Source: Ascidiella aspersa
Lineage: Eukaryota
Direction: 5' to 3'
Length of the DNA stretch: 64,000 nt
NCBI GenBank assembly: GCA_963924565.1
Contig: OZ004610.1
Location: 15,934,001 to 15,998,000, forward strand
The translations under genes and the position numbers were made by a program. The notes beneath the pieces were generated by a model. It was not told the origin of the DNA, searched no databases, and worked only from the letters and a program-made list of their open reading frames with translations. Position 1 is the first letter of the stretch, and each line of letters starts with the position of its first letter. This document shows, piece after piece, positions 11,001 to 52,416 of this stretch.

Positions 11001-14000
11001 TAACTGGAATAACCTTTCACAACACAATACTCAGCTAAATAGTTTTGATTTGTTATCAAAATTTGCCAGCTAAACCTCGTGGCTAACTATTTTATTTCAA
11101 CCGAATCGTTTTATATTTTAACAAACAAAATCCAGCTGGCAAAAAATAAATAAAATTTTACATTAAACTTAACATATTTTTAATAAAACGTCTCCCACGC
11201 TTGCCAGGTACCGACCTCGTAATTTGGTAGATTTCGCGCGACCTTCCAGCACGCAGGTTAAGGTGCCACACACCAGGCGTGGTCTTGAGCTGAAAATATC
11301 CGAGGTTTGCCATCACGATGGTATCTACCGACACCGAGCTGCTGTTAACTCCTAACGTGAACTGAAGACCACGCGGAGAAGTACCTTAGTGTTGTAAGAA
11401 TCAATGTGAGGTGGAAAAACACCGGTCCCAGGTAGTCAAACACATTTATAACACAAAGTAAAACAATCGCGATTAATAAGCTTGTGACGATAACGTACGC
11501 AAGAAATACATGAATCCCCAAACAAGGTCGCCCGGCTTTTTTATGAACTAAGCTCAAAGACTAACGTTTTCAAAAGTTAGTGAATCACTCAACATGTTTC
11601 ATACATAATTCGAAAACTGTATAAATGTCATTAACAAAATAACTAACAGTTGACTAGCACTATCCAAACAAGTTGAAAATAAAAAACCTAAAATTCCAAG
11701 ACTATATTTAAAGACATAGGGCAAGATTATTAATACGCAAATCATTTCTAAGACAATCATAGACATTTAATGATCAAATACGTTGTATCAGTCTGTCAAA
11801 AGTCACTGTGTGTTTTGAATTAACATATAGCTAACAAAGACAAAATAATTGTTAGATTTGCTGATATAATTGTTAAGATACAATTTGGTTTCTCGCAGCT
11901 AAATAAGTGGTTATTTAAATACTGACATCGTTTTTTTTATCAGGGATGGCAAACCTTTTTGTTGCGCGGGTCACAAACACGACCTTAATCCTTACAAAAT
12001 GCACAAGTGGGTTATATATTTAATCATGATATGCTAGTTTTATACGAAACTTGGATGATGCGTCGTTTTAAGTGTTATTGTCTAGGTTGGTAAACTCAAG
12101 GTTTTTGGACGATTTCAAAATTGGGATTCCCACGAATATTATTAAATAGTTTACAAATGCTACGGCATATTATGTAATGACAGGCGTTCGGCAGAAAGCC
12201 TTTTAGTATGGTTTACCTAGGGTTTTCAGAATTTTTAGTCTGTGAGCTATTAATTTCCCTCCCTTTTAGCACCCTTTACATTTTACAGCAATAAACCAAA
12301 TTCTATTCGTTTAATGCTTTTCTGCACACAATTTGTTGGAGTGGTCAAGCCAAGATATTTGCCCCAAAATGTGTATAAGGTCTTAAAAGTGATGTCACAT
12401 TTTTCTTTTTATTTAGAAAAGTTTAAGATTTTCTTTGCGTGTTTATTAGTTACCTTCGTTTAGTGTTGGTAATTGAAACCCTCGTCATATTACGTCACAC
12501 CACCCGATGTGCGTGGTAAACTGTTCGCCTAACTCAGGGGTATACGGCTTTTTCGTGCGACGTATGGCTCTTTTGATGAAAGAATCTTGCTTGCAGATAA
12601 ATCTAAGCTACCATTTCGTAGCATGATTTGAATAAAACTGCACGCGGTCACAGCCGCTTTCCTACCTTATTTCTCCTTGTTAACACACATAGAAGCAAAT
12701 TTTTCGGCGATTTAGCGCGAATCCTATTTTTTTACTGTTATCCCGTTTGAGGGAATCTCTTTATATCCAAAAGGCCCTGTTATTTCCATCGGAAATGCGT
12801 AATCAAATTTCTGCAAACTAAGCTAACAGCATAATCCTCCAAAGCTAGCAATTCAGGTCAGACACTATTAAAAAAAGATAGATATATATATATTTCGCGC
12901 ATCGAATAAATTGTCAGGAATTAAGGTCGACATTTATCTTGCAAGGATCAAGGTGATTTCCAATATCACATATTCAGTGCAACAAACTTAGCTAGTTCAT
13001 TTATTCGTGCTAAGTATGTTATTTCCTTTAAATGAGAACAAAATAGAGGGCCTGCTCAATTTACTATTTTTTCCAACCTATAACTAGCTTGTTAAAAAAG
13101 TATTATATGGCTCTCATGGAAATACAACAAAGGACATTTGGCTTTTATGGCTCCCTTAGCTAAAAAGGTTTCCGACCCCTGGCCTAACTGGTGTAACTAC
13201 AGACGTTTAGCCCAAAATAAAAAAAACTAAGTCGGAATATGAACAGTTGGGAGCTGGGACAGAGACAAACGTAACTTAGGTGCCAAAAGCAACGCATACC
13301 CGAGGTAAGATCTTTTGCGTGTCCCTCCAGCGCGAAACACTCCAGCTCGTACTCGGCCTGAACCGAATTGTCGACCTTTTCCAACTTGATATTGTCCAAG
13401 TCGTGGACAGCCTTAACTACCTCGACCAGCCATCCCTCGGGCGGGTGCATGGTTAAGGTCAGTATGGACTTGGACGGCAAATCAATGAACTTGGCGTGTG
13501 GGCCGTTCGACATGCTGTTGTCGACCTGACAAAGACAAGAAAAGACCTATATTCGAGTTTCAACATCGGCCTTATTTCATTACCACCAGAAAAACAAGTT
13601 TTGTTACTTGCTTTTGTTCTTCCAAGCAATGGAAACTGATGAGCGTCATGTATATGCAGCGTTTATTGATTTGTCGAAATGGAACGTTATTGATTTGAAA
13701 CCGTTAAGTTTACTTTTCTTAATTCCATTTGTTTGTCCTTTATACCAGGGTTTCCCAAACTTTTTTGGACCACTTTTTGTTAATCTGTTTTTCTAGGACC
13801 GCAATACAAAGCAAAAAATAAACAAAACTAAATTTTATATATTTACAAAACTGACAACATCAATGGGACGGATGAGATTGCGTCCCTTGCTTAAAACATT
13901 AATTTATCATAAATTCAAAGCGCAACAAGTAAGCTTTACGATACTGGATAGCAAAAGCTTTCGAAATCATTAAGTTGTGAATAACTGGGGCAATTTAATT

Positions 14001-17000
14001 ATTTTTGAAAGAGTACACATACTGTACAACAGGGGTCAGCAAACTTTTTCTAGTCGCCGGTTAAAACCAAACTCAGAAAGGTCTCTGCGGCCGCACAAAA
14101 TTAATTATGTTATTAAAATGTTAGAACAACTGTTAATCAGGCGAGCTTCGGATATGTTTTTGCACTTAAAATCGTGTTTAGTTACTTTCAAGGAGGCAGT
14201 AAAGTGTTGGCGCAAAGCGGGACAAAAAGCGTTTGTTAGGTTCAAAATTCGAGTCCACACGTCGTTATTCATATTGAAAAGTGTAATAAAACCACTTTGA
14301 TAAAACGCGATAACGTTAATGGTTAATCTAGTTCAGTGTTTGTTAACATACTGTATTCCGGGCGCACCTGGCGAGCGCGATTTTTTCTGGGTATACCGGC
14401 ATTTCTTTCAAATTTCTTGGAAGTTTTTATTACATTTCCAAAATAAAAATTAAAAATGTATGTCCAATATTTTTGATGACGTTTTCTGTTTGTATGCGAC
14501 GGCACTTGGGGTCAGTCCTCCACAGCACAAGAAGCGCTAATCTAGTTCAAATGACAGCATCATAACGTAAACAAACCTGATGTATAAAGATCGTTAACGC
14601 AAAGCGCGAAAATTTTTCGCACTTACGTAGTTAAAATAGTCAAAAAGTATGAGAAATGGACTCGTGTCTAGTTTGTCAAAGGACAAATTACGGCCCACGG
14701 GCCGTAGGTTGTCGGCCCCTGCTGTACAACATATATGACTGTGCAAGCATTTAATTTCTTGTCATATCGCCACGGACCACCTGTGCAGTGGTCGCGGACC
14801 ACCAGTGGTCCGCGGACCACAGTTTGGGAAACCCTGCTTTATAACATTCTATTACCGGCTGATTTAATATATGATTGCTTTAATGCATGACTAATCTTGT
14901 AGATATGGCAACACATGTCTAATGCTTATGCTGCAAGACACCCTGTTAAGTTGCTGTTATTCCTGTGTTACCAGGTGTTAGCATTCGTTGTTATGCTCAC
15001 TCGGTATTAATTTTTTTGTTATATACTTATATCATTATACATATAAAATGTTTTATAGTAAATACTACTTTCAGACTTGGCGTTGGTAAAATGAAAGATA
15101 ATTTTATCACCTTAAACTTGAGTTCAGGCTCTATCACGTATCTGTAGAATCGTTTGATGGGCAACTCTGAAAGTTTCTCACGGCAGTTCATGTAGATCTT
15201 CACATTTGCTCCAAGTGCTTCATGGAGCACCTGAATATGACAAATCTTAACTAGAAAACACACGAGCTTCACAAAAGGCTGTAATGCAATTATAATTTTA
15301 ATTTTTAACGAACAATTAACCTGTAAACCACCGAAATTCGAAACAATAAAGGGTTAAATGTTAGGCAGAAAACCGCTATATATAACCTTTGGTGGTTGAG
15401 CATTGAATTGAAGATGAATAGAAAGAACGTGGCGCACATTACTGTTGCAAATTGATTCCCTTACCATAACAATGGGGATAATTTCCTGCGCCTTCTCACT
15501 GGCTGGGTCAACCACTAGGGTGATGTCGTAAGGTGAAGTTTCCGATTCCGTGCCCGCGATCTTTATGACGCTGTGCTGCTGTCGCAAGTTGGAAAGGTCA
15601 CGTCGCTCCAAGTCGGACTTCGGTTGCGAGGCAAGGTGACTGTTAAGCTTCATAATCAGGTCGCTTCCTGTTGACAATTGGTGAGAAATTGTTCAATGAC
15701 ATTTAGATACCATTATCGTTTTGTTGCTCGCGTTTTTTCTGCTTTTTTTCTTCGTGTGTTTTCCGTTTATTGTACAAGCGTTCAATGTCATTCACCCTGA
15801 CGAAGACGGCTTGCATAGGTTGCCGAAACGTTGGTCAAGAAATAAAATTACCAGAGGAGCTGTTTTTTTACTTTATATATTAGATACATTTAGTTGTTGG
15901 GACTGCCAACACTGAAGAAAACATAATGTTAAAGAGACAATTCTAAATTCGGGCCAATCAAAGGTTATTATTTTTTGTGGTAAGGCCTACCTTTTGCAAT
16001 ATAAACCCTCCAAAAAAGTTGGAGGTGATTGTGCATTGAGATTGCACGACAGATATCCTTATCTATATTTCATTGTAGTAGGTAGAAAAACAAATATTTC
16101 TTTAGTAGGCCTAATAAATAATTTGAGCAGCAATAAAACCTAATTTAACGACTTGATTCAACGTAACGTGTTATTTTTTTTGCAACCGGTGGATTTTATA
16201 GCTAATAATATTGATTAATCAATCAAGATATAGTCAGGTGCGACTGTCGCATCATTAATATTAAGTGTTCCCTGAATCAAATATTTCGTAACTGTTGTTA
16301 ACAAACTGTAACAACAACATTTTTTTCCTAATTTAAAAATATCAATTTTGTCCTCCATTCAGGTATTCGCAAATATTTGTAAGGTAATATAACATTTACT
16401 AAAATGTTGTGCTATCGTTGTCTTTTTTAACAGTTTATTTGATTTTTTACTTGCTATGTGGTTCATCATACGAATTGGGGTCGAATATGGACATCTATCG
16501 TTTGATTTAAGTTAAATACAACTGATAAAATTTTAAGAGAAGCGAAAACCTGTTTTATGACACGAAAAATCGTTTTTTAAAGAAGGCCGACTAAACCTGA
16601 CAAACAGTACTGCGCATTATTATCACCTTGTGGTGCTGTAAGTTCTTTCTTGAATGACTTGACAGCCGAATCGATGATTTTTGCTGCTGTCGAGTATATG
16701 AGAGACTCGATTAAGTGGAAGTCATCGGAGGCAAACTTCTCATCGGGCTCGAGAGGTCCGATCACCTGAAATGTATATGATTTAAAAAAATGAAATACGA
16801 TATGTGGTTGTAGCTTCATAACAGTGTCTTGTGTTTGGGTCGTTACAAAAGAGTATGAGAGTTCACATATTACGTGTAAAAAGTAATTGCTGAACTGTTA
16901 AAAGTTTGGACTGTACTTTGATATGTATGTATATTAGGGTTGTTCAAAAAAACACTTTTTTGTCAAATTTCAGTGGGGACCCCCTGGAATTGTTAGGTTG

Positions 17001-20000
17001 CGTCTAAAAACCCCACAAACCAAATCTGAGCACATTTGGTTCAGTATTGACCGTGCTACGTCAATTTGAAAATTCAGATTTGGGCTGAAATTTTGAAAAA
17101 TATGAATTGTCCTCCCCCTAAAAATTTTTTTTTTCTTTTTTTGCATTGCTTTGCAATTGAATAGCCATAAATAAACCTGTTTTGCAGTAAAAAAATGAGT
17201 AGTCATGGTACAAATGTCACATTTTCTGAATTTTCAAATTGACGTAGCACGGTCAATACTGAACCAAACGTGCTCAGATTTGGTTTGTGGGTTTTTTACA
17301 CACAACCTAACAATTCCAGGGGGTCCCCACTGAAATTTGACAAAAAAGTGTTTTTTGAACAACCCTAATCTATATGTTAACCACTTTGCACCTAAACTCA
17401 ATGTTTCCCATCTTACAGAATAGAGGGCCAACTTCAGATGTGCTGTAAAAGGAACATGCGGACATACCTTTCCGTTAGCAACCACCGCAGTTTGTCCGCG
17501 ACGAAGGCCAAGCACGGAAACTGACCAGTCCAGGTGAGCGGCCAATTGGGGCACGGCCACTTCCGGTTGCGTCATCAGTTTTTCGAAGGCGTTTTTATCC
17601 ATTCCGCCCACGAAATAATCCGAGAAGGTTTTTTCCCCAGTGACGATCTTGCGAGCATTTTCCTCTTTCATCTGAAAAAAAATTGGACATTCTTCGCTAG
17701 TTCAATAGGTTTTCCGTCGCGAAGTCACGTAAATCGGTTAAAAAGGGACGCTATTTAAGTATTATTTTATTATTAACTGATTTATCAAAGCCCCATTGTA
17801 TTTTTTGTGGAATGACTATATATTTTAGCCTAACTTCCACGTTCACCTATTCAAGGGGTTGTTAAACTCGGGTCGCGCCCCCAGAGCGGTGCAGCAAAGC
17901 ACGGGGCGCAAAAGGCTCACTGAGAAATAAACATTGTTCTAATTTCTTTAGTACACATTTTTTTAAACAAATCATTTTTTTTAACTATTTCCGTTGCTGA
18001 CACATATCATTTTATTCCAATCAGGCAATCACTTAATCTATTTTTGTCGGCAATATTATTTTTTTGTTTTTTATATATATATAGTTACAGTTCAGCAGGA
18101 TTCTCACCATACACATAGTGTTGTCAGGGGAAGTTCCAAAAGCCAACTTTTACCAGTAAAATGCGAAATGTAAAGGAAATCTTTGAACCCAAAGCCGTGT
18201 ATATTATGGCATATGTTGTGTTGTATGAAATCATATATTTTAGATTTGCAAAGAATGATAATTGTAACTTAATAACACACATATTTTGTTCTTTACATGC
18301 TGATATACATAATAACATTGACAAACTGACGTTTAAGAGAACCAATATCAAACAACTTTCGCATAACTAGTGAGTTTTACATTTAAGTGCCTCTTTGCAC
18401 AGTCTGTGCGATGTTCCTTTTTGTTTGAAAAACCCTGCATATTGCACATAATTATGGCTACAACACATTATATTCGATAAGTTGTTTCAAGGGGGCGCGG
18501 CCACATTCAAGATACCAGGACCTATAACTTAATTTTGGGAAAATAAACGAAACGCTAAACTCAAAGATCAATTTAAGAAGGGTGTGCACTGCGCAGAGTG
18601 CACTGTGCAAATTGATTGATTGATGCGAAAGCAAGACACATATAAAAAAGGCTTAACCTTCTATTGCTAACATTTTTATAACACAGCGTCAGTATAACCA
18701 TGATTAAGCATTTCAAACAAAAAACACACATGAAACATGATATTTACGTTTGACCTTTGCAGCTTCGCCTAAAACCACTTATTGTTATGTTTCTTAAATG
18801 CGGCGTATGACTATTAAATGAAACTATTTGTTTTTATGTGGTGTTTACAATTTAATAAATATTGCTTAAATAAACTTGTCTAAGACACAGTCCACTCTGG
18901 CTGCTTTATAAACTATTATAATATTCTGTATAAAATAATATTAGAGTCATAAAATAACAATCCTATCAGTGTAGTCCTTTAATAGACGACAGCCAAATGA
19001 ACATGATCAACTATCTACTGACCAGTTTGGTGATGAAGTTCCTGGCGTTGTTGGCGCTCTGTGTTGCCAACGCCACTTCATAAGCTCGCGCAAACATCGC
19101 GTTATTGACTCCGCTTTCCATCTTAAGGTTGTGAATAACCGCTAGTCGCGTGTGGCTGCTCGACTTCTATAAAATACAAGGGAAAAAGATTGAAGACTAT
19201 AAAGTACTGACGCATCCCTGAAAACGCATAGTGAAGTTTTCTTAAACGTTACGCAAATGCTAGGGTGCAATTACTAATTCAAGGCGTCACACATCAACAT
19301 AAATGAACTAAATGTAACTTGTCGAGACTTCAAAGTCACAATAAAAAATAATTGCAATTAAAGCTATACAACAAATTAAATTAACATTACACGCGTTACG
19401 CATTTCAAAAGACCCCTAATTGATTTATTATAAAGCAGTCGTGCTTACAACTTGTTTTAACGCGTTGTAAACAATCGCCCTTCCGTCTTCGCTCTCGACA
19501 TCTGCCACCAGCCACATCGTCACTGGCCGAATAAACTTGCTGCCGTCACTTTTTGAGATGTAACTACAAAAAAAAAGAAAAAAACTCTTTCCACCGTAAT
19601 TTACAATAACATTGCATATGTTGGGTATAGTGCGTTGTATGTTTCGTCTTGAACACTTTCAGGTAGAAAAATAATTAGATTAGATGAAATACTTTAAACA
19701 AGAGTGTGTATAACTAGGAAAGGAAAAATCTACTAGAATTTTCGTTGTTGAACAAAATGTAAGAATCCATTATGCTGGGTAGGCTCTCATAACTATTTGC
19801 AAAATCACGTCGTAACAGGTCCGTGTAAATTTTCTAGACTCGTGCTACAGCCGCTGAATATCATAAAAAAGGTGCAATTTGCAATATCATAAAAAAGTTT
19901 ACAACATGTTACAGCAAAAAAGCGAAAGCATTTTTGAAAAGCGATCAGCCTAAAACAAAAATCACTATTAAATTTTCCTCGTGTAGATAGTCTAGATCAG

Positions 20001-23000
20001 GGATGGCGAACCACTGACACGAAGTGACCCACCACTGCCTTCTCAATGACCCACTTGAGGTTCAAAAAATGTAATAAAATGTTAACAAATATTTAAGTGA
20101 CTAAACTTTTGTATTTGTAAATATGTCCAGTTTTAGACGTTTATGACTTCAGAAACGTTTATGACTTCACAAACCTTTAATGACGTTTTGTGTTTAGTAG
20201 CCAGTTTATACTTCATTTAGCACTGAGCACAGTTAAAAATAGTTGCTGGTGTTATCCTAACCTTTCAGGCAAGTCTAAATTAGACCTTTGACTGTAAATT
20301 ATTTTACAAGTAGTGAATATCATAAAAAAATATATCAACCGTCATTTCGAGAGCAATCACGATAATTTGTGCTCTATGAAAGAGAATGAAAAGTTTGAAG
20401 TGATTCAGAGAGTAGTAAAGCAACATAAACAGCAAACCAGTGGCTTTAAGAATATCTTCGGAAAACCACTTTCTGACGGTGCTTACGTAAAAGAAGCTTT
20501 CAAAATATGTTCAGAGATGCTATTTGAAGATTTTCCAAATAAAACTGCTATTCTCAAAAAATTGATCAGCTACCTGTGGCAAGAAACACAGTAAAGGATA
20601 GAATAATTGCGTTGAACGAAGATGTTACTGACCAGATGTTACTAGATTTAAGGAATGCAGGATTGTTCTCAATTTGTTTGGATGAGAGTACAGATGTTAC
20701 CTCATCTTCCCGTTTAGCAGTTATCGCAAGATTTCGAGCAGGAAATATAATGAAAGAAGATCTCATTAAACTAATGATATATCTGAGAAAACTAGAGGTC
20801 GATGTAATGACTGAACTAAAGAAATAATTTACTAAGCTAGGGATAGACATGCAAAATATTGTATCGATAACGACTGACAGCATGATTGGGAAACATATTG
20901 GATTTGTCCAGTTACTAAAACAGGAGTTGAAGCGCAGCTTTGTTGAGTTTCACTGCATCATACAAGCCCTTTGCGCTAAATCCCTGAAATCTCTTAAAAA
21001 CGTTATAACTGTTGTAACAAAAATATTGAACTATATTGCAGCTCATGTTCTTAATAAACGCCAGTTTCCAAATTTGTTGAACTCGTGTGATAGTGAATTT
21101 TTTTTCTGGATTACTTATGTACAATAATGTAAGGTGGTTGAGTTGTGTCAATGTATTAAGCCGATTTGTTGAGTTGTTGGAAGAAGTAACACTATTTTTA
21201 GCTGAAAAAAATCATAATTATCCCGAATTAAGAGAAACTATGTGGTTGACCGATTTGCATTTCTTTGCTGATTTTACAGTGCATAACAATATTTTAAATA
21301 CTAAATTGCAAGGTTGTGGAAACACTGCATTGTCGATGTTTGGGCATGTTAAAGCATTTGAAAAGAAACTCGCTGTCTTTTCTGCAGACCTTGAACAAGG
21401 TAAGCTGAAATATTTTCCACAGCTACAGAAGCACTTTGCCAGCACCGATTTAGCTCACGACCAAAAGAAAAATGCCCTCGACAAGTATGTTTTGCTGACG
21501 AAGCAGGCCAAAGATGTAATGTCAGAAAGATTTGCCCAGTTCCGAGAGCTAGATTCTACATTGCAGTTTATTCTTTCCCCACATACAATTCAATTTGAAA
21601 CTCTTGAATTGTCGAAGTTTGAATGGCTTCGTCTTTCCAACTTTGGAAATATGATAGACTTCCAAGAAAGTGCAATTTGGAAAAAAAATTTATAGATTTG
21701 AATTACCACCTACAAAAAACTGAAGGACAAAATGGATGGCAGCGAAGTTATTGCAATTGAACGCCGTGTGGAAAATATAATCCTCACAGAATGGAATTCC
21801 CTACCAAACTCGTTTGAAAACATGGCGAGTCATGTTTTCACACATGAATTTCACAAAATCGAGTACCAGAAATCGTCTCAGCTCAGATATAGTGCTGCAT
21901 GTGTTAAGTTGAAAACTACACATTACCAGCCTAGGATCACAAGATTTGCAGAGAAGATGCAGCAACAGGTTTCTCATTGATATCATTAAATCTGTGACCC
22001 ACTTTGCTTTTTTTCAGGATTAAGGTCTCGTCTATGACCCATTCACTTAAAAAGGTTCGCCATCCCTGGTCTAGACTCTGTCTAATCCAGTGTTTCTTAA
22101 TCAGGTGAATGGTTCACCCCAGGGTGAATAAAATTTTTGCAAGGGTGAACCAACCGATAGGGGTGAATAAGGGTGAACCGTCAAAAACGGATGATAGCTT
22201 GTGAAACAATCAAACAACCTAAGCAATTTTATGCTGTTATATATATATAGACAAGATAGTTTTACCATATCATGAGACAAGGGTGAATGAAATCTGGAGA
22301 TATATGCTAGGGGTGAACAAAACTAAAAAAGTTTAAAAAGCACTGGTCTAGTCTAAACCCTGATTGGAAATACTTACGACTGGCCAAGAAACTTTGCAAG
22401 AGTTGCAGTTTTATCAGTGGATGATAATTCGCTAAATTCCTTAGCTTTCCAATAAGTGGTTTCTACAAAAATATAAAATAAATTTAGAAATCCAGCTGTG
22501 ACAAAGCCGGTTGGCTTAGGATGTACATTTTTTAGTTTTAAGAATTAAATTGAAAAACTCTAGAAGATTTTACTGGCATATAAACCATTGCAAAAACAAT
22601 GCAACCTTTGATCGAAATAAAGAAATGGTGAACTCGGGGATAATTACTCATTTAGTGCAAGTTGTCATAGAGTATCCTAAAAAATCATGTCGTATATCGA
22701 GTGTTCACACCATTTCAAATTTTATAATTTCATACTAAATCCCGCAGAAGCGAGAAAATTAACGATTGAACCAAGTTGCCGACCTGGCTTAGCAAAGCCG
22801 AGAAAACTCAGGTAGTTGTCTTCGGCTTTGAGAATAATTTCGTTGAAGCGTGACACGACACCAGGTCGCGTCATCAAGTAGTCGAACACGTTCATTTTGT
22901 TGTCGATGTTTCCCATGTAAACCGCGCGCTGAATTCCCGACGTGGCATCTAAAATCTTTTCGATCACCACCTGAAAAAGAAGGGCTAATGTTGTTGAACC

Positions 23001-26000
23001 CTACCGAGTCGAGACTCCAGCCATTTTTCCCTCTGGGTTTCCTTGAGCGGTAGAATAGAACAAACGATAACCAATCCTAATCATGTCTAAAAAACAAATT
23101 TAGCCGCTATTGCCTTACAAGCAACGGACCCTTATCTCCGCCACAAATAAGTTAAAATCGTTTACCTTGTGTCATGCAAAGTATTAACTCGGGCCCTATC
23201 TCTACGCCGGCACCTGCTCCCCAGTGGAGACGAGTTGCCAAGAGGAATGGGCTCTCGACTAAAACACACTTTATTACGCCATTTCCGGCCTCCCTCTTAA
23301 GTAATGGGAAGAACCCCATTTTACTTTCCCGTATAAATTCACCATTGCTAGACAAAATTAAATTACATACAAGTATAGCCAAAATAGTACAAAAAAGCGA
23401 TTTTTTTGTAAAACAACTTTTGAAAGTGAAAGCTGTATTAAACGTCTCAGATTAAAATAGAAGCAATAGACTTGTGCTACTAAAGTGTTTACTTAATTGT
23501 AAACGCATGCAAAAAACTAAAATGGCAACATGCTTTTTTATTCTGTATACAATCAGGTCAGACCAAGGAGCATTGTATGTACAGATTTTTGCCTTATCAC
23601 GGCTTTCGTTGTAATATTTATGCTTATGTTAAGTAGTTCGAGTGATCTTTAAACAAGATTCAAACGCAGATTCTGTCTAACCAGTAAGGGGCCTAATAAA
23701 AAAAGATTTCTCTGTATTTTGGTTGGCAATGTTATTTAAACATCCTTGAATCGTACCTGTTCAAAGTTGTCAGGTGAAATGTCGTCTTCCGTTAGCAGCA
23801 TTCCATTTAGCAAAACGTTTACTTCGCCGGTCAACCCAGACCTGGCGTAAAACGCTTTGCCCAGTTTACGTTGTTCATCGTACTCTGAACTATAAACAAA
23901 GGGCCACATGTTTTGTTCTATACTTACGTTCAATATTAAAGTTGTATAAACTCCGTGGAGAAACACGATGCTAATGTTTTTTAGTACTATTTTCAAATTG
24001 TTTGGTAACAAATAGCATTCTTAATAGCCCAAGTGATTTTACAAAAATGAACCTTTCTTTAAAATATGTCATTTTCGGGGGCCTGTTTTTGTTTAGGTTT
24101 AACATCACATCTGGGGTCTCTCCTTATGTTTAAAATAGGGATTTTTGTAATGTAATTTTATACTCCAAAGTGTTTAAAATCACTTCATATCCAAGCAAAA
24201 TGGACAAAAGCATTCACGAACTTACTCTGGGCCGAAAATGTCATCGAGTTCCGCATCTTTAAACTTTTTTTTTAGTCTTTCTTTCACGTGTTCAACGGTG
24301 ATCACGTCATCTTCGCCCAGTGATTTAAATATCTGCCACAAGCGACAGACGTCTTTGTTTTGTCGATATATTTCACAGACTAAATATGAACTATACGAAA
24401 CAGAATAGCTGTCAATACATTCAGGCAGATTCTGTTATTCGAAAGGAAACTCCATATCTATAGCCGTCAAATAATAATTAACGTTATCCCGGTGCTACTC
24501 TGCTCTATTGTGTAAGTTTAAGTTTTTCTAAACTTAACCTTGATAACAATCAATTAAAAGTCAAAAATTTTGTGTGAATTTTTTTTTACTATTGAGCTAT
24601 TTTGGCGTAAACAAATATTGAGTTTAATAAAGGAAATAGACTTACCCCAGCAAAAAAGGAGAACGTTTTCTCAGAATCATCCAGCTCATCTTTAGCGTAG
24701 TTGTAAGCTCTCACCAGAGCAACTCCAGCATCTTTGTTGCCATCCACGTTGGGCGAGTCGTCAACCACCATCGAGAAACCTCAAAGTATCGACAAGCGTT
24801 TGAGATGTAAATGCAAACCCTGTTTGGCTTTGGTAAATATTATGTTTCGAAATTAACAAGGTGGCGTTTCTTGTATTAAAACAGGAGCAAAATTGCATTT
24901 TTCGTCAAAATGGTAAATGCTACATATGAGCAAATATGTTGATTTAATCAAAGACTCAAAAAACTAACACAAAATTGTAATGCAACGAAAATGTTGGAAA
25001 TAATTTAAATTAAATTTACGAAAAGAAAATACATTTGTTTGCAATAGAATGCACGAAAAATAGCCAGTTTGACTACCATAATGTTGGCATGCACTTTTAA
25101 AGCAATATGCCCCAAAAGCATGACTTTCTTAACAGTCTAAAAGTTTGCCGCCAAACGCCAGTTACCGATTCGGAGAGGCACGTCGTTCGCCCAAAAAATC
25201 TCGGCTGACTCAACGAGGTACTTCATGTCTTCGTGCGTGGGATCGCAAACGATTACCAGGTGAAACATGTTCTTCCTAATCCTTCGCAGGGTGCCGGGAA
25301 AGGCTGGCCTCAGCATCTCGTGCAGGTTGGAAGGCCAGCGCGAGTACTTCTCGTCGTTTTCCACGTCGTTCAGCCACTGTTCAACCGACAAATTATTGGT
25401 AAAAGTTTGAGGGACGCCCGAGCCCCCGACCATTGCGTTTTCGGCAAGTACGTATTATATATATATTAGGGGATATATTGGTCAAGACCGAATTGGGGGA
25501 TGGGGTAACCTTTAAAGGATAACATTACGTAAACGCAAAAATGGTTCATAATAAAAAAAACAATGAAATTTAAAGCCATTACGCAAATACTTTTTAGTGC
25601 ATTACCACATAAAAATAAAAATGGAATAACGGGTAATTACTTTTGATCATATTAAGAGAGTAATGCAATAAAGCAACATAACAAACTTTTACAATTTTTT
25701 TATATTTTACATGCGTCTCAAAAGTTCTCGGAAACAAGTGATCTATTAAGCATTAAAAAACTCGCTGCAAAATACGACGGTACTTTTTTAATGCCGTATT
25801 ACTATTGCTTGACGTGATACTTTTGCAACACAAAGGGATTTTAACAGTGAATAAAATCTGCAAAATATCCACACGTGGCACTTCATGTAGCCACCAGTCC
25901 AACTGCATTTGATTCACGCATAATAAAGATTAAGTGAAGGAATTCTAATCGCCAAGTAATTGGAAAGAAGACAAAATAATGCCTCGCTGAATGAACATAT

Positions 26001-29000
26001 TTTAAGTAAGTACTATGAATGTTGCACAACTGCGATCTACACTTCCCCCACTCCCGCCGCTACCCACATAATAAATATATAAGTTTAAACTAAAATTTCA
26101 TCAATTTTAACAAAAATTGTAGATTTTCACTCTAATGCCCCGGGGATATACGTTAAAAAATCTTAGTAAAAAACAAATGACAGTTTGATTCAGCCAACTC
26201 CTGTTTACAACTTTTATTTAAAATATTTTGAAAGAACCCCTTAGTAAACCAAACGCTCATGTCGGTATTTATGGTACACAAATTCAGTGATTTTTAACCA
26301 TTTAATCCAGTTGACATAAAATTGCTTTTTAAAGCTAAAATCCAACTTTAGAACCGAAGTTTGTTAAGCGTTATTTAGATCAGTAGACGAACAAATATAA
26401 CTTTTTTATATAACTTCTCCCGCAACGGCTCACCGAAATCATTCGCCTAATCAGGAATTCGGTGTAAAATTATAACTGCTCAGCTTATTAACTTTCAGCT
26501 TTTAAAACTCCCCCTGAGTGAAGAACGCTTTCCCAGCCCGTAACATCTCTAATAAGGAAGTAACCGGTGGCCAAGATAAAAAAGTAAAATTTCAATACCG
26601 GGCCCTTACCATAATGGACTTGTCGCGAATATCAAGCATGTAATTTTCAGGCACATCGTTTTGCAGATTGACCCGCATCATCTTCTGGATATCGTCGCTA
26701 TTTAAATCTAACTTTTTGAGTCCGTCAATCAGCCTACCCTCACTGTGTAACACGTCCAGGATCCTAGTGAAGCGAACAAAATAAAAGTTATCGGATGCGC
26801 TCATCAGCACTAGGCAATTTGTTATTAGCTTGGTAAATATTTTATGCGCCGTAATAAACTTGCAACACATTTTGTAACACTATTACTCAAGAAATCAGTT
26901 TACGTCTGGTTTGTTGTATTTCACCAGGGAACCAAAATAAATTCCGCAATTATGCGATTGCAAAACTCAATATAGAACAATGTGTAATTTTATAGTCTAA
27001 CACAGAGGTAGCCAACACGTTGGCCGTGATCGACCGGTCGATCGCCGCATTTTACCTGGTCGATCGCGTCCAATATGTGTTACGACATTACAGTAACTAT
27101 CGCACACAAGCGCAACATTAAAATGACCAATTGTTGTTTGTACAAGCCTAAGAAAGCGTTCTTTGACGTAACAAATTAACCTTCATCGCTGACTTGGAAT
27201 GCAATTAACGCTCAAAATGTTGTATAAGTGTTTTTGTGATTTTTACTGAACCAGTCGATCGCGAGTCCCTAAAAATATTTCAGTCGATCGCAATCAAACA
27301 TAAGTTGGCTACACCTGGTCTCACAAAAGAATAACGAGTCCCGTTTGACTTGTCCAATTACCTACTTTTGTGTTGGTATGCAAACAAATACAAACCTAAA
27401 TTTGAAACTACAGCCCAAATCGAAACAAAAAAATAACTCGGACAGCGTCTTTCACTACGTTACAATGACTAAGTAGGAATTTCCACAAAATGTTTGCTTA
27501 TTTTGCGAATCTGTCGTAGTTAGTGGAAACATTAGTTTGACTACCAAGTATACAATTCACCGCTTTAAGTACCCTTAAACCAGCTACAATCATTTTTCAT
27601 GGCACCTTTTCAACTTCTACCACTCACGAAAACAAGTTAAGGAAGTCGAGATTGACCGGGAGACGGTTTATGGAAAGGTAAGCGCTGCCGGGCCAAAGGC
27701 CATAGCGCATCTTCCACCGCTAGAGGTACATAAAAACATTACGATTTACACGCGTGCATAAAAATATGTATAACTATTATCTGCACCCATTTCATTGGCG
27801 GTCAAACGTATTTTACAACCGTCAGTAGTGATCCAGCTGTAATCAAATTATTTTTTTACAGAAAGGGTGCAGATAACAAGCTTGCTTACTTAAACATGTC
27901 AGAATCGGCAACATCAATTTGTAATCCGTTGAGCAGGAATAGTGAGTCACCAGCATCCAGTTCAAACCCCTGTAACCTCTGTAATGCCATATGTGTACTT
28001 ATGAGCACATTTTCTTGGTTTTTGAGACTTACAACTTTACAACAAAAAGACAGTTGCCAATTGCTGCAATGTTGCAGAATTGTGTTGTGTAAATTTTATA
28101 TTTGCAAGAGCATTTTTTTCAAAATTAACATGGAAAAGTTAGTAAACAAACAGTTAGAGTAGAAACCTGTTGGTTAATCTTAATTTCTCCCCGGATGTCA
28201 TCAGAGACTTGCTGCTTGACAAGGGACCTGAACAACATATTACAACATGTCAAATTGTAAATTATGTTATAAACCCTTTTTTAGGCATTTACTATATATA
28301 CACTATAAATTACCTGACTTTGATTGGAAAATTTAGACTGATATCTTTCAGCACTTTCATTTGCTCCTCAGGTGGAGATGAAAGAACTCTTGCAGCTGCC
28401 TAAACAACAAAATCGTGAAGCCAAAAATCATTACAGCTTTGCTCGGTTGCAATCGTATGGAACATTTTTTTTTGATAGAAATACAAAATAAGGCCAACAG
28501 AGAAAGGTTTATTACAGTGCCAAATGTACTAAAGAGTTACACATTTCTCAAATAATATATGCAAACACCACTTAAATCAATGGGATACCTTGAATAAACT
28601 TCAATGTGTCACTTTGCACATTGTTAAAGCATGTTGTTGACCTTATGATATGTAATTAACATAAGTGTGTAAGCAAAATCCTTGACGCAAAAAGAAAACC
28701 AACAGATTTAACAAAGTTTTAAAAAAACACAAAATATTTTTCCAAATTAAGGTTTTTTGAAAAACAAAGTTTTAGATGGGATAGGTGTTTGTAAACATAT
28801 AAAAGTTAAAATATGAAGCACTTTAACCTGAAAACTAAGATCCTGAAGTTGCCAAACTTTCATCGGAGCCATTTCATTGGTTGATTCGGTAAGGTGATTG
28901 CGGAATTTAGTCAACTGTTCCGAAAGATTAGGATGAAGTTTGCGTAACTTGGGAAAATCGAAACCTTCAATTTCAATGTCATCTTCATTCTCACTGGTGG

Positions 29001-31309
29001 AATGTTCCGAGTCATCTGCCATTTAGTCTTGTTTTAATAACAGTATTTAAAAAAATTATAAAAAAATTTATATGTCAAACCTTTCACTTTACTATCATCC
29101 AGAGCTTTGTACTCTGTACTTTTTAGAGCAAGTTCAACACCATAACCTTTGATTAAAGTAGAAAACACAATAAAAACATGTTCAATATCGTTACATTATT
29201 TGATGTTAAATGAACTATAACAGTGTGTTGTAATTAGGAATAATTAATGTTGATATATATAACTTTATAATATCATCATGTTTATTCATTAGTTGTAATG
29301 AAAAGTATTGGACAAAAAAAACATTGAAATAAAAATGGTGATTTTTCCTATTCTTAACATACTAAAAACACAATAAAAAGGAAACATGGTCTACACTGGT
29401 ATATTATGTGATGTTAACTCAACTATAACAGTGTTGCAATAAAGATTTATTAATATTAATAAAACTTTATAGCATCCTGATTTATCATGTTTAATCATTG
29501 ATTGTAAAAAGTAATTGACAAAGTCAGACATTGAAAAAAAATATAGAAGGTGTACATTTTCTTATTGTTTGACAAAAACATAGTCTGTATAGGTACATTA
29601 TTTGATGTTAAATCAACTATAACAGTGTGTTGCAATTAAGAACAATTGATGTGGAAATAACTTTATAATATCATCATGTTTAAGCAATAATTGTAATGAA
29701 AAGTAATTGACAAAAACAGACATTGCAAAACATATATAAGGTGTGCTTTTATATTTTTAACAATAACAAAATGTTTTTCTTGCCTGAGAGTCTAGCTTTC
29801 CGTTTGGGTCTTGCACGGATAAAATGCCTAAATACATATTTTGCAATTCCTTCATTTGCAAGACGTTTCATAAACTCATGAGCATCTTTAAATTGTGGAT
29901 CCTCAATGTTACCATACAATACCACAGAACGATTCAGTGACTGTGAAACTACAACAATTTTGAAAAGTTTACTTCCAGTTATTGAAGTCATTTAAACACC
30001 TGTGTCACCATATATATATCAGAGGTTCTTAAACTTGTGTGTCATAAAGCCCTGGTGCATATTTTTTTTCTAAGGCCATCCAACAAGTGATTCATTTTTG
30101 TATCTAAACCTAATGGTGGTACTTAAATGCTCAAATTATTATTATCCCATGACATATTAATTCAAATTTAATGTTGCGAAAAAAAAATACAGCAATTATT
30201 CATGATTTTTATGAAACCCAAAAAAAATGATTTGGTATAAACATTTCAGTAATTTAATGAAAATGTTATCATTTGGTGTTGCAAGTCAAACAAACATTTC
30301 AATAAGGGTTGGAACTGGCAAGAAATGTTTGAGAACCACTTCCATAATTCAAAAAAAATGTTTATATAATTTTAGTCAATTCTACTCATACAAAAAATAA
30401 AATTTGTAAAAGTGTGGTACCAGGATAAACATGGTCTTGTTTGAAAACAGCTGGTGCATTGTTATTTTCCTTCAACGATTTCACTATCTGGTGAACCTGT
30501 TTAAAGTCACAAACCACTTTTCCATGTACATCAAAAAATAGGTCACATCCAGTGGGGTCCACTGATTTTGCTACCTAACAAAATATATTATGTCTCAAGC
30601 AACAACTTTGGTTAACTGAATGACATTTATCTTGTGTACATACAGCCTTAGTAACTAAGGACATTGCAGAAACAGTTTGATGCTTTACTTTATAAATCTA
30701 AATATACAATATTTTTAAATTATAAGTAGTTTTTTTTAAGTTGTTCTTTTTTAAAACATACTTGGTTAAACATCTCAATTCTTGGTGAGTAAGCTCTTAG
30801 GGAAAGAGACAATTTAAGAAGTTTTATTTTAAGTGAGTCATCTCCATCATTTAAGACCATTTTAGCAGCCTTTAGCGAGGCCTCATACATTGTCCGTGCA
30901 GATTGTACAGAGTTAACAAGTCCAAAGTTAACCACAGTATCAACATAGCTCCAAAACAAGCCCGCATTTTCGTCTGCTAAAAATTCACTAAAAAAATCAA
31001 AATTCAAGGTTTTGTAACACTACAAATTTAATATTTCATATAAATAACTTTACTTCACATAAGAATTATGCACTACATAACAATTCAGCATGTTAGGAAC
31101 TTTAATAGGACTTAAACATATTCCATAAATAGTATAGCTGCACTTCAACATTTTTTAAATGTTGTCACTTACCTAGCTTCCAAAATAACTGGTGTGTTTG
31201 GCCACTTGCTCTGTAATCCAGCAATCACTGGTTTTGATATAGCAGAAACCTTGCTATCCAGAACAAGCACAGTGAGACATACCAAAAGTGTCTGCCATGA
31301 CTTGCCCAT
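2027..31309 (-). CDS. UGGT: UDP-glucose:glycoprotein glucosyltransferase (ER folding sensor, GT24), 34 coding exons, 1555 aa
   Basis: Phase-consistent exons: 31173-31309, 30762-30987, 30421-30574, 29784-29948, 29081-29146, 28828-29015, 28314-28399, 28167-28227, 27890-27978 (alt 27628-27719), 26610-26763, 25166-25376, 24646-24779, 24226-24332, 23757-23889, 22784-22970, 22378-22462, 19449-19563, 19023-19166, 17468-17671, 16627-16765, 15465-15667, 15111-15230, 13300-13525, 11216-11384, 10786-10870, 10578-10690, 9907-10120, 9271-9380, 9087-9180, 8578-8717, 8221-8362, 2701-2790, 2247-2382, 2027-2067 (sum 4668 nt). Signal peptide [23 protein letters not shown]. Motifs [74 protein letters not shown] (DxD), [17 protein letters not shown] and C-terminal HEDL*. 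Confidence 0.97.
3179..6141 (+). mobile_element. Decayed hAT DNA transposon (ZMYM1-like / hAT transposase pseudogene) in a UGGT intron
   Basis: TIRs cagggccggatta (3179) and taatccggccc (6129-6139). Transposase remnants [36 protein letters not shown] and KSLSQTRWS, with frameshifts and stops. No clean TSD. Confidence 0.85.
6320..7140 (-). pseudogene. Degenerate Buster/Charlie-type hAT transposase fragment (internally deleted)
   Basis: Minus-strand remnants [33 protein letters not shown] and [27 protein letters not shown] (dimerisation-domain TTYLCE.GFS motif). Confidence 0.7.
7553..8052. mobile_element. hAT MITE (inserted into an older MITE starting at about 7382)
   Basis: TIR cagtggtcggcaaact / agtttgccgaccactg, TSD ctctacag / ccctacag. 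Confidence 0.85.
12535..13181. mobile_element. hAT MITE
   Basis: caggggt...gacccctg ends (left TIR partly deleted), perfect TSD gcctaact. Confidence 0.8.
13746..14836. mobile_element. Nested hAT MITEs (outer 13746-14836, inner 14030-14721)
   Basis: Outer TIR cagggtttcccaaact / agtttgggaaaccctg, TSD ctttatac / ctttataa. Inner ends caggggtc / ggcccctg, perfect TSD ctgtacaa. The inner element has a second copy at 56853-57421. Confidence 0.88.
15711..15879 (+). mobile_element. Short PLE pLTR-derived insertion carrying the hammerhead
   Basis: Flanked by the direct repeat ttagatac (15703-15710 and 15880-15887). Shares the hammerhead architecture and downstream motif with the PLE at 1-480. Confidence 0.6.
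15794..15835 (+). ncRNA. Second minimal hammerhead ribozyme motif, in a solo PLE pLTR fragment in a UGGT intron
   Basis: acc-CTGACGA-agacggctt[gcat]aggttgcc-GAAA-cg-TT-ggt, followed by accagaggagc (compare accagaagagc after the motif at 391-432). Confidence 0.7.
16935..17367. mobile_element. Foldback-like hAT MITE with about 145-bp terminal inverted repeats
   Basis: 16935-17078 is a near-perfect reverse complement of 17225-17367 (tagggttgttcaaaaaa...tttgaacaacccta). TSD atgtatat / atctatat. Confidence 0.9.
19998..22068 (+). mobile_element. Buster/SPIN/GTF2IRD2-like hAT transposon with frameshifted transposase
   Basis: Perfect 15-bp TIRs cagggatggcgaacc / ggttcgccatccctg, TSD gtctagat / gtctagac. 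ORF pieces with [34 protein letters not shown] and QQQVSH*. Confidence 0.93.
22088..22345. mobile_element. hAT MITE with subterminal gggtgaa repeats
   Basis: cagtgtttctta / taaaaagcactg ends, TSD gtctaatc / gtctagtc, multiple gggtgaa motifs. Confidence 0.75.
27003..27317. mobile_element. hAT MITE with gtcgatcg subterminal motifs
   Basis: cagaggtagccaac / gttggctacacctg, TSD gtctaaca / gtctcaca. Confidence 0.8.
27628..27719 (-). CDS. UGGT: Alternative (putative mutually exclusive) UGGT exon 9b
   Basis: ctctag|CGG...TTT TC|gtgagt, 92 nt, open frame [30 protein letters not shown](S). Same start phase (0) and end phase (2) as exon 27890-27978 ([29 protein letters not shown](K)) and alignable to it. 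Confidence 0.8.
29162..29748. repeat. Degenerate tandem repeat, about 3 units of about 200 bp, filling UGGT intron 4
   Basis: The block gatgttaa(a/c)t(g/c)aactataacagtg...aactttata...atcatgttta...ttgtaa...aaagta...gaca...acattg recurs three times. Confidence 0.8.
30020..30341. mobile_element. Degenerate hAT MITE
   Basis: cagaggttcttaaac / gtttgagaaccact ends; TSD unclear. Confidence 0.55.
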
Positions 31310-51500: not shown

Positions 51501-52230
51501 CCAAATTTGTGTGCAAGGTAAGTTTAATTCATTTACATTCGTGGTCACGTAGTCGAACAACTCAAAAAAGATGGACAACCAAGATCAATTTATTCAGCTT
51601 GTACTACCAATAATAACACCGAGCATACATTCGACGTTGATCGATAAACTGCATTAACATACATGATGCACAAAAGAAACACAGAACTTTGCAAACAAAG
51701 GTACCTGATAATCTTGTTTTATATAACGTCTAATTTTCTTTTGCGTAGTAATTTCAAGGTCTGAAATAGTCTTTTGAAACTAACAAATACATTATCGGCC
51801 TTACATTTCGGTATTAATTAGGAAAATGGCATCTATGTTCGGTTTTTATTCAATTAGTCCAATCGTGTAACCTATAAATTTAACGTAGTAACACATGGAG
51901 CACCATTTCTGAGAAAGTAATTAAAAACATCATTTCGTGAAACGGTACTACTGACAAAACATCCAGGCATTTAAGTTTGATATAATTTGTTTAACTATAA
52001 ACGACGATATTTATAACGATACGAAATATGTATAGTAAGTAGACAGTACAATTTTAATTACTATTATCTGTCATAATATAATTATTGGCCAATGACTTAC
52101 GTGCTGCCTCCGTAACGGAATTCAAACTGAGTCCGTACAACACTGCAAGGACTATTGTGGCAATCGTCATTATTACGGCCACAGCAGCCCAAACTTTATA
52201 CTTTTTGGTCGATTCTTTCTGTTCCGTCAT
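36594..52230 (-). CDS. M13-family zinc metallopeptidase (neprilysin / endothelin-converting-enzyme-like), type II membrane protein, 15 exons, 736 aa
   Basis: Exons 52101-52230, 51317-51361, 50374-50535, 46454-46534, 46184-46389, 43238-43402, 42822-43075, 42427-42649, 41509-41792, 39937-40090, 37874-38032, 37303-37368, 37059-37160, 36842-36918, 36594-36696 (2211 nt). Short basic tail plus TM ([26 protein letters not shown]). Motifs [40 protein letters not shown] (HExxH), [14 protein letters not shown] and terminal CRVW*. Confidence 0.95.
38272..38679. mobile_element. TIR element (MITE) in a neprilysin intron
   Basis: About 33-bp inverted ends tggtttatagggcgtatcaaagttagtaaattt / aaatttgactaattttgatacgccctataaacca. 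Confidence 0.75.
38706..39475. mobile_element. hAT MITE with gggggccacg subterminal repeats
   Basis: cagggtttctcaacc / ggttgagaaccacta, TSD gtttaggg / gttaaggg. Confidence 0.8.
47758..49033. mobile_element. Non-autonomous TIR element with TA target duplication (Tc1/mariner/pogo-like), containing a nested gagtcggactc-rich hAT fragment (about 48241-48535)
   Basis: TA|ggggaagtacgggacccatggaac ... gttccatgggtcccgcactacccc|TA, with internal atggaac and cccatgg repeats. Confidence 0.75.
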
Positions 52231-52348
52231 TTTTGTTCTAACTGTTTATTGTCACTAGAAATTTCTTTGCGAAACGTATTTTTTTATCAGATCCGACCCT
52301 AAGCACGAGCGATAGTGAACTGAGTCAACACCGGGAGCCGCGTAAACT

Positions 52349-52354
52349 TTTATT
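52349..52354 (-). terminator. Candidate polyadenylation signal (AATAAA) of the HSPA12-like gene
   Basis: AATAAA on the minus strand about 63 nt after the TGA. Confidence 0.6.
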
Positions 52355-52416
52355 GCAATCTCGCGCGTATGATTGAACTTTGACCCCCTGCTGGCCGCCG
52401 CCACGCATCGCGTACC

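What the first reader, a model, noticed from the sequence alone, without database searches (positions are those of the whole stretch)
27628..27978. Duplicated, frame-incompatible exon pair in UGGT: two candidate isoforms of the ER misfold sensor from one gene
Seen in sequence: two exons lie between exon 8 (ends phase 0) and exon 10 (needs phase 2). Exon 9a, 27890-27978 (89 nt), encodes [30 protein letters not shown]. Exon 9b, 27628-27719 (92 nt), encodes [31 protein letters not shown]. Both have canonical AG/GT sites and open frames, and either alone restores the frame. Including both, or neither, frameshifts. They align (R...G...L..N.L.(I/V)(D/N)......F). Established: this segment (about aa 362-391) lies in the N-terminal thioredoxin-like substrate-recognition region of UGGT, and vertebrates diversify UGGT by gene duplication (UGGT1/UGGT2). 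Inference: this lineage may diversify it by mutually exclusive splicing instead. 9a is acidic while 9b is basic and aromatic (W, Y, W, Y), which could change client or partner binding. I know of no description of this, but I could not search.
Basis: partly seen in the sequence, partly recalled or inferred. Interest (0 to 1): 0.9.

Follow-up and report, generated by a model that had tools for sequence, protein, structure and literature searches.

The report
Conserved alternative exon pair in UGGT
The single gene for the ER folding sensor UGGT in this probable sea squirt carries two old, very different versions of one small exon, only one of which can be used per mRNA. A distant relative keeps both intact, so the gene probably makes an acidic and a basic form of one sensor domain, although no RNA with the second version has been seen yet.

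Summary
Exon 9a (27978-27890, 89 nt) and exon 9b (27719-27628, 92 nt) lie between exon 8 and exon 10 of a minus-strand UGGT gene. Both have AG/GT borders and open frames. Either alone keeps the reading frame. Both together, or neither, give an early stop.

9b is not a chance ORF. It matches the same UGGT segment as 9a far above 6000 random windows, yet 9a and 9b are almost unrelated to each other (4 of 22 residues).

A related species found in metagenome contigs (L012, L014) has the same 9a/9b pair, although its synonymous sites against this genome are saturated. Its 9b is intact, in the same phase, with AG/GT borders and pN/pS 0.45. The charge contrast is also kept (9a -4/-4, 9b +3/+4). In both species an RNA stem of 15-18 bp occupies the same place in the 9a-9b intron.

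UGGT is single-copy in this genome.

The weak point is expression. The one RNA run, read shallowly, shows five 9a-to-10 junction reads and none on 9b.

Verdict: a selected, probably mutually exclusive exon pair, a new member of a known kind. The scan has noted many such candidate pairs in this genome, and a sibling note covers the stem.

The parts
2230..31309 (-). UGGT gene (UDP-glucose:glycoprotein glucosyltransferase). The start codon and signal peptide are at about 31309. The last coding exons are at about 2272-2379 and 2701-2790, after a 5.4 kb intron.
   Evidence: tblastn of 137 full-length UGGTs on the window gives up to 25 collinear pieces at about 50% identity. All PF18404 exon matches in the genome lie in this locus.
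28167..28227 (-). Exon 8 (61 nt). It ends in phase 0 with ..INQQ and donor GTTTCT.
   Evidence: Sequence; tblastn piece ending in NQ. The same intron position follows NQ in protein fragment P0278.
27890..27978 (-). Exon 9a (89 nt, 29 codons plus 2 nt). This is the canonical, acidic version (net charge -4), and it keeps the family's GDS and NG motifs.
   Evidence: Segment HMM 23.2 bits, E 8.5e-6 in the window. Five RNA reads join 27890 to 26763. It is 55% identical to the relative's 9a.
27720..27889 (-). Intron between 9a and 9b (170 nt), with a stem. The 5' arm is 27876-27862 (intron +14 to +28). The 3' arm is 27791-27777 and ends 57 nt before 9b.
   Evidence: The arms are 15 nt long and 93% complementary. 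The fold is -39.6 kcal/mol, z -2.4. The relative has an analogous stem in the same position.
27628..27719 (-). Exon 9b (92 nt, 30 codons plus 2 nt). This is the divergent, basic version (net charge +3). It has NR instead of NG and 53% G+C, against 31-38% in the flanking introns.
   Evidence: It is unique in the genome. No RNA read lies on it in run X3. Its orthologue is at L012:5428-5516.
26764..27627 (-). Intron between 9b and exon 10 (864 nt). It contains a very high-copy MITE-like repeat at 27003-27317.
   Evidence: Depth is 10,000-24,000 in the DNA contigs there. The terminal inverted repeats are 27003-27016 and 27304-27317.
26610..26763 (-). Exon 10 (154 nt). Its first base completes the split codon, giving K after 9a and S after 9b. 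It ends in phase 0.
   Evidence: junction reads.

Best explanation
Exons 9a and 9b are an old tandem duplicate of one UGGT exon, and both are kept by selection for their protein sequence.

The exon encodes about 30 residues of the thioredoxin-like domain that Pfam calls PF18401. By inference this is the first part of TRXL4. The segment is a Pro-Gly loop, a strand, the NG turn, a second strand and the start of a helix.

An mRNA can carry only one of the two. Including both (181 nt) or neither shifts the frame and gives an early stop, so such mRNAs would be removed by nonsense-mediated decay (inferred).

A conserved stem in the 9a-9b intron loops out most of that intron. It leaves roughly 70-80 nt between the 9a donor and the 9b acceptor, which may additionally hinder 9a-to-9b splicing (inferred).

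9a gives the canonical acidic segment. 9b gives a basic one that lacks the NG glycine. The single UGGT gene would therefore make two sensor variants that differ on one face of that domain.

Shown:
- homology
- frame logic
- single copy
- conservation and constraint in a second species
- use of 9a

Inferred:
- use of 9b
- NMD
- the role of the stem
- any functional difference
For: 1. Both exons match the same UGGT segment. Best local score against 84 distinct UGGT segments is 65 for 9a and 56-60 for 9b. The null is 23.4 +/- 3.8, maximum 45 of 6000.

2. 9a and 9b are near-random to each other: 4 of 22 residues, 27 of 65 nt, score 20. Each keeps a different subset of family residues. The duplication is therefore old and 9b has not decayed.

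3. 9b has exon-like composition, 53% G+C against 31-38% in the introns.

4. Under simulated neutral decay, an AG-exon-GT unit of this size stays intact with P of about 0.05-0.12 at 0.2 substitutions per site, and 0.01 or less at 0.5.

5. The related species (L012, and L014 at 99.2% identity) has 9a' at 4945-5033 and 9b' at 5428-5516. Both are 89 nt, with AG/GT borders, in the same order and phase.
- 9b' scores 54 against the family (null 23.3 +/- 3.9, maximum 42).
- 9b' scores 44 against our 9b (null 15.4 +/- 4.0, maximum 35 of 5290).

6. Synonymous sites between the two species are saturated (pS 0.68-0.97). For 9b, pN is 0.38 and pN/pS 0.45, close to exon 10 (0.47) and 9a (0.35).

7. The two 9b exons share marks that 9a and other UGGTs lack: W(R)KMR at the start, no G after N, NLF at the end, and donor GTGAGT.

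8. Net charge is -4/-4 for 9a and +3/+4 for 9b. The family mean is -3.7.

9. The stem lies in the same place in both species although the sequences differ. The 5' arm starts at +14 or +21, and the 3' arm ends 57 or 59 nt before 9b.

10. UGGT is single-copy in the 308.6 Mb assembly.
Against: - No read covers 9b or its junctions in the only RNA run. Power is very low: 6% of the run was read, exons had 1-3x depth, and there were five 9a-10 junction reads.
- The segment HMM scores 9b at 2.3 bits, rank about 25 of 2952 ORF pieces in the window. 9b has lost the near-invariant glycine of NG and two conserved aspartates.
- Only one related species could be examined.
- The two 9b exons are only 35% identical. 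The relative's 9b is almost as close to our 9a (score 38) as to our 9b (44). Independent duplications cannot be excluded on 30 residues.
- pN/pS rests on a short alignment that was optimised on the protein.
Confidence: 0.75

Rival explanations
1. 9b is a regulatory 'poison' exon, not a coding alternative. It would be spliced in together with 9a to create a premature stop and lower UGGT output through nonsense-mediated decay. It would be conserved for that reason.
For: - 9a plus 9b gives a stop inside 9b (read by hand).
- No 9b-only transcript has been seen.
- The conserved intronic stem could equally be a regulator of such inclusion.
Against: A poison exon needs no open frame in the 9b-only reading, no fixed length class and no family-like residues. 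Yet:
- both species keep an open frame, a length of 2 mod 3, and PG / N-x-L / F positions of the UGGT fold, with synonymous changes under them;
- pN/pS is 0.45;
- nucleotide identity is only 51%, unlike typical conserved poison exons.
Confidence: 0.1
2. 9b is a relic. It was an alternative exon for a long time, is no longer used in this species, and has not yet had time to break.
For: - There is no RNA coverage in the run examined.
- The NG glycine and two conserved aspartates are lost.
- Intactness is compatible with neutral drift of less than about 0.1 substitutions per site.
Against: - The exon is intact in two species separated by saturated synonymous divergence. Recent death in both would have to be coincidental.
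- Its 53% G+C has not relaxed towards the 31-38% of the introns.
- The loss of the NG glycine is shared by both 9b exons, so it is an old, tolerated feature and not fresh damage.
Confidence: 0.1
3. 9b is a chance open frame with splice-like borders, in other words not a real feature.
For: - The open frame is only as long as the exon.
- The profile HMM score is insignificant.
- Twenty-one frame-compatible AG..GT intervals exist between exons 8 and 10.
Against: - Its pairwise family scores lie 8-11 standard deviations above 6000 random windows.
- It is the only non-9a candidate above 28.
- A matching exon sits at the same place in another species.
Confidence: 0.02

Closest known systems
Tandem-duplicated, mutually exclusive exon substitutions (catalogued for human and fly genes: PMC8373072, PMC9741552, PMC5740500, PMC9013439)
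   Same: - Adjacent homologous exons of nearly equal length and the same phase.
- Canonical splice sites.
- Old and conserved across species.
- The swap replaces a homologous stretch inside one folded domain.
- The frame is incompatible when both are included.
   Different: - No paper in the held library links UGGT to such an event.
- RefSeq isoforms of UGGT in ten invertebrate species do not differ in this segment.
- Transcript proof of exclusivity is still missing here.
RNA-structure-controlled exon choice (competing stems in Dscam-type clusters and mammalian ATE1: PMC6071210, PMC7797038) and steric hindrance as in alpha-tropomyosin exons 2/3 (from my own knowledge)
   Same: A stem of 15-18 bp lies in the intron between the two alternatives, at the same position in two species whose sequences there are unrelated. 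If it forms, the donor of 9a and the branch region of 9b come within a few tens of nucleotides of each other.
   Different: - It is a single intra-intronic hairpin, not a docking site competing for several selector sites.
- The linear intron (170 or 394 nt) is not itself too short.
- No effect on splicing has been tested.
Vertebrate UGGT1/UGGT2 paralogues
   Same: Two versions of the folding sensor that share the catalytic domain and differ in the N-terminal sensing part.
   Different: - Here there is one gene, and only about 30 residues of one thioredoxin-like domain differ.
- Whether the two forms differ in clients or partners is unknown.

Membership tests
UGGT (GT24 glucosyltransferase with four thioredoxin-like domains) | C-terminal Glyco_transf_24 catalytic domain | tested here: met
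   PF18404 matches seven exon pieces of this locus above the cut-off, covering positions 1-268. One exon is 90-94% identical to animal UGGTs.
UGGT (GT24 glucosyltransferase with four thioredoxin-like domains) | N-terminal thioredoxin-like domains collinear with known UGGTs, including the domain that holds exon 9 | tested here: met
   There are 25 collinear tblastn pieces over about 1430 residues against full-length UGGTs. In relative P0172 the segment (366-395) lies in PF18401, which spans 299-432. PF18401 run directly on the genome gives only a weak exon-10 match of 19.4 bits.
Mutually exclusive exons from tandem exon duplication | Neighbouring exons are homologous, with the same phase, similar length and canonical splice sites | tested here: met
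   The exons are 89 and 92 nt, both 2 mod 3, with AG/GT borders, and both align to the same family columns.
Mutually exclusive exons from tandem exon duplication | Mature mRNAs contain exactly one of the two | tested here: inconclusive
   The 9a-to-10 junction has five reads. There are no reads on 9b and no 9a-9b junction, at 1-3x depth in one run. The frame logic predicts exclusivity.
Mutually exclusive exons from tandem exon duplication | Both copies are conserved under purifying selection in other species | tested here: met
   One related species (L012/L014) has both copies intact, with pN/pS 0.35 for 9a and 0.45 for 9b at saturated pS.
RNA-structure-regulated exon choice | Conserved base pairing in the intervening intron | tested here: met
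   The stems are 15 nt at 93% and 18 nt at 94% complementarity, at matching positions in two species. This is a two-species comparison, with no alignment-based covariation test.
RNA-structure-regulated exon choice | Disrupting or restoring the pairing changes exon choice | not testable with these tools
   This needs a minigene experiment with arm mutations and compensatory mutations.

The most novel reading that the evidence does not exclude
The tunicate lineage splits the work of the ER folding sensor between two splice forms of a single UGGT gene. The canonical form has an acidic TRXL4 segment. The other form is charge-reversed and lacks the NG glycine. The two would differ in client range or in docking of the SEP15/SELENOF partner. 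The choice would be enforced by a conserved intronic hairpin that turns a long intron into an effectively too-short one, that is, structure-induced steric hindrance.
Probability: 0.2. Interest if true: 0.75.

Novelty: new member of a known kind. Interest (0 to 1): 0.55.

Why it matters
How UGGT recognises misfolded glycoproteins is still unclear, and its flexible thioredoxin-like domains are the suspects.

A natural pair of isoforms would help. They differ in only about 30 residues of one such domain, show a conserved swing of 7-8 charge units, and come from an animal with a single UGGT gene. That is a ready-made experiment: express both forms and compare clients, partners and activity.

[quoted passage not shown] It further offers a compact two-species example of a conserved intronic stem between alternative exons.

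Tried and rejected
- A profile HMM of the segment does not support 9b (2.3 bits). I kept this as evidence against and relied on pairwise scores with an empirical null.
- The search for homologous proteins gave little:
  - The exon-10 ORF found nothing.
  - A profile of full-length UGGTs plus our exons as separate rows returned only distant animals, about 50% identical, with no tunicate in the best 120.
  - The exon-6 ORF found three Logan fragments (P0276 79%, P0277 59%, P0278).
- Alignment A3 (one full-length row plus 32 exon rows) was misaligned and was dropped.
- The RNA evidence is limited to one run at 6% sampling.
- Polymorphism has no power:
  - There is no difference in 9a or 9b between the two DNA samples of this species.
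  - There is also none between L012 and L014, which differ at only 10 SNPs and 2 indels in 1.9 kb.
- Folding the relative's whole 9a-9b intron is not better than shuffles (z -0.9). Only the single 18-nt stem stands out.
All searches were exon by exon, by reference.

Full report
**1. What is in the sequence**

The window holds a UGGT gene on the minus strand, running from about 31309 (start codon and signal peptide) to about 2272. Full-length UGGTs from many animals lay on it in up to 25 collinear pieces at about 50% identity.

Read on the minus strand:
- Exon 8 is 28227-28167 and ends in phase 0.
- Exon 9a is 27978-27890 (89 nt).
- Exon 9b is 27719-27628 (92 nt).
- Exon 10 starts at 26763 with the third base of a split codon.

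Both 9a and 9b are preceded by AG and followed by GT (GTAAGC and GTGAGT). Both are open in phase 0, and each alone restores the frame. Read by hand, including both gives a TAA inside 9b. Skipping both gives a TGA eight codons into exon 10.

**2. Is 9b more than a chance open frame?**

The frame of 9b is exactly as long as the exon (31 codons). Twenty-one frame-compatible open AG..GT intervals exist between exons 8 and 10. The borders alone therefore prove little.

The similarity does. I took 84 distinct versions of this segment from full-length UGGTs. The best BLOSUM62 local score is 65 for 9a and 56-60 for 9b, and the top-ten means are 60 and 53-57. For 6000 random stop-free 30-residue windows of the same DNA, the best score is 23.4 +/- 3.8 with a maximum of 45. 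No other candidate interval exceeds 28.

A profile HMM of the segment points the other way. It gives 23.2 bits to 9a but only 2.3 bits to 9b. The reason is that 9b has R in place of the nearly invariant G of the NG turn, and N in place of two conserved D. I report this as a real oddity of 9b, not as evidence that it is unrelated.

**3. Age and state of the duplicate**

- 9a and 9b are almost unrelated to each other: 4 of 22 residues, 27 of 65 nucleotides, local score 20.
- Each is about as close to vertebrate UGGT1 as the other, through different retained residues.
- 9b has 53% G+C, between introns of 31-38%.
- In a simple neutral-decay simulation, a unit of this size keeps AG, GT, phase and an open frame with probability about 0.05-0.12 at 0.2 substitutions per site, and 0.01 or less at 0.5.

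An old duplicate that was never used should be long gone.

**4. The cross-species test**

A scan of metagenome contigs found four contigs of one related species (L011-L014). The query was an alignment of our exon 6 with those two fragments (A4). Against our gene, this species' exon 11 is 86% identical, exon 6 is 66-68% and exon 10 is 47%.

In L012, the orthologue of exon 8 is followed by:
- 9a' at 4945-5033,
- 9b' at 5428-5516,
- exon 10' at 5859.

Both 9a' and 9b' are 89 nt, have AG/GT borders and are in the same phase.

9b' scores 54 against the UGGT family (null 23.3 +/- 3.9, maximum 42 of 3000). It scores 44 against our 9b (null 15.4 +/- 4.0, maximum 35 of 5290).

Synonymous sites between the two species are saturated in every exon (pS 0.68-0.97). 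For 9b, pN is 0.38 and pN/pS is 0.45, close to exon 10 (0.47) and 9a (0.35).

The two 9b exons share features that neither 9a nor other UGGTs have:
- W(R)KMR at the start,
- no glycine after the N,
- NLF at the end,
- a GTGAGT donor.

Net charge is -4 and -4 for the two 9a exons, and +3 and +4 for the two 9b exons. The family mean is -3.7.

L012 and L014 are 99.2% identical over this interval. They show no difference in either exon, but the expected number of differences is below one.

This is the result that moves 9b from a curiosity to an exon under selection for its protein sequence. It rests on one relative. On 30 residues I cannot exclude two independent duplications.

**5. Expression**

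No indexed RNA run holds the stretch. One raw RNA run of the same species (X3) was laid on 24200-29100:
- About 6% of the run was read.
- Exon depth is 1-3x, and all reads are in the orientation expected for a minus-strand gene.
- Five reads (three start positions) join 27890 to 26763, so 9a is used.
- Depth over 27644-27807 is zero, and over 27480-27643 it is 0.02.

With five junction reads, this bounds 9b use only loosely.

**6. How exclusivity may be enforced**

Frame incompatibility with decay of the double-inclusion and double-skip forms is sufficient in principle (inferred).

There is also a stem in the 170-nt intron between 9a and 9b. Its arms are 27876-27862 and 27791-27777, 15 nt long and 93% complementary. 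The fold energy z-score is -2.4.

The relative's 394-nt intron has exactly one inverted repeat of 12 nt or more. It is 18 nt long and 94% complementary, and its sequence is unrelated to ours. Its position matches ours:

| | 5' arm starts at intron position | 3' arm ends this far before 9b |
|---|---|---|
| This genome | +14 | 57 nt |
| Relative (L012) | +21 | 59 nt |

If the stem forms, the 9a donor and the 9b acceptor are separated by roughly 70-80 unpaired nucleotides. The branch region would then be close enough to the donor for a tropomyosin-like steric block. That reading is an inference.

**7. Where the segment sits**

In a hemichordate UGGT (P0172), the segment is residues 366-395, inside Pfam PF18401, which spans 299-432.

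The same Pfam domain holds the KVWQLQD motif. Its V and W are V278 and W279 in the numbering of PMC11348098. That paper assigns them to TRXL4 and to a predicted secondary contact with the SEP15 thioredoxin-like domain.

So the alternative exon most likely changes the first part of TRXL4. The P-G...NG pattern resembles the cis-proline loop and the following hairpin of thioredoxin. That resemblance is from my own knowledge and was not tested.

**8. Copy number and novelty**

The GT24 domain matches only this locus in the 308.6 Mb assembly, apart from one weak hit elsewhere (32 bits, on a different contig). 9b matches only itself.

No paper in the held library connects UGGT with mutually exclusive or tandem-duplicated exons.

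RefSeq isoforms of UGGT in ten invertebrate species never differ in this segment. These species were a hemichordate, sea stars, amphioxus, gastropods and a tick.

The mechanism class is well known, so this is a new member of a known kind.

Other agents' notes call this genome a probable sea squirt. My data agree only in that the protein is about equally distant (about 50%) from vertebrates, amphioxus and a hemichordate.

**9. Limits**

- Every search used single exons by reference.

Noticed in passing
window 27003-27317: A MITE-like repeat of about 315 nt with 14-nt terminal inverted repeats lies in the 9b-10 intron. Depth in the DNA contigs is 10,000-24,000, against 50-100 around it. The RNA run has reads on both strands with many loose ends at 27271 and 27316-27318.
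   Followed up: partly
window 2791-8214: This 5.4 kb intron near the 3' end of UGGT carries several plus-strand open frames of 60-115 codons (about 3855-5700). It may be an inserted mobile element. It was not examined.
   Followed up: no
window 37000-50500 and 52000-55200, minus strand: The upstream neighbours look like an M13 (neprilysin/ECE-like) peptidase gene and an HSPA12-like HSP70 gene, judged from open-frame translations only. A first-reader note (s1-791093) proposes an operon across their 186-nt gap.
   Followed up: no
proteins P0172/P0279/P0280, P0191/P0289, P0197/P0291/P0292, P0219/P0293/P0294: RefSeq UGGT isoforms of a hemichordate and three sea stars differ by the same 4-residue insert (SSSF, SSFF, LSSM, SSFV) at about residue 1220. 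This looks like a conserved 12-nt microexon in Ambulacraria. Gastropod isoforms differ at about 240-252 and 752-762.
   Followed up: partly
L021:3475-3624: In this lophotrochozoan-like contig, the counterparts of exon 9 and exon 10 are contiguous, with no intron between them, and there is only one exon-9 copy. Its start (W.QRYGL.PG.SA) is closer to our 9b than to our 9a.
   Followed up: partly
G000:C3:13089332-13089988 (L008): An intronless 695-codon open frame matches the GT24 model weakly (32 bits, positions 1-217). It is probably another GT8-clan transferase and not a second UGGT.
   Followed up: no
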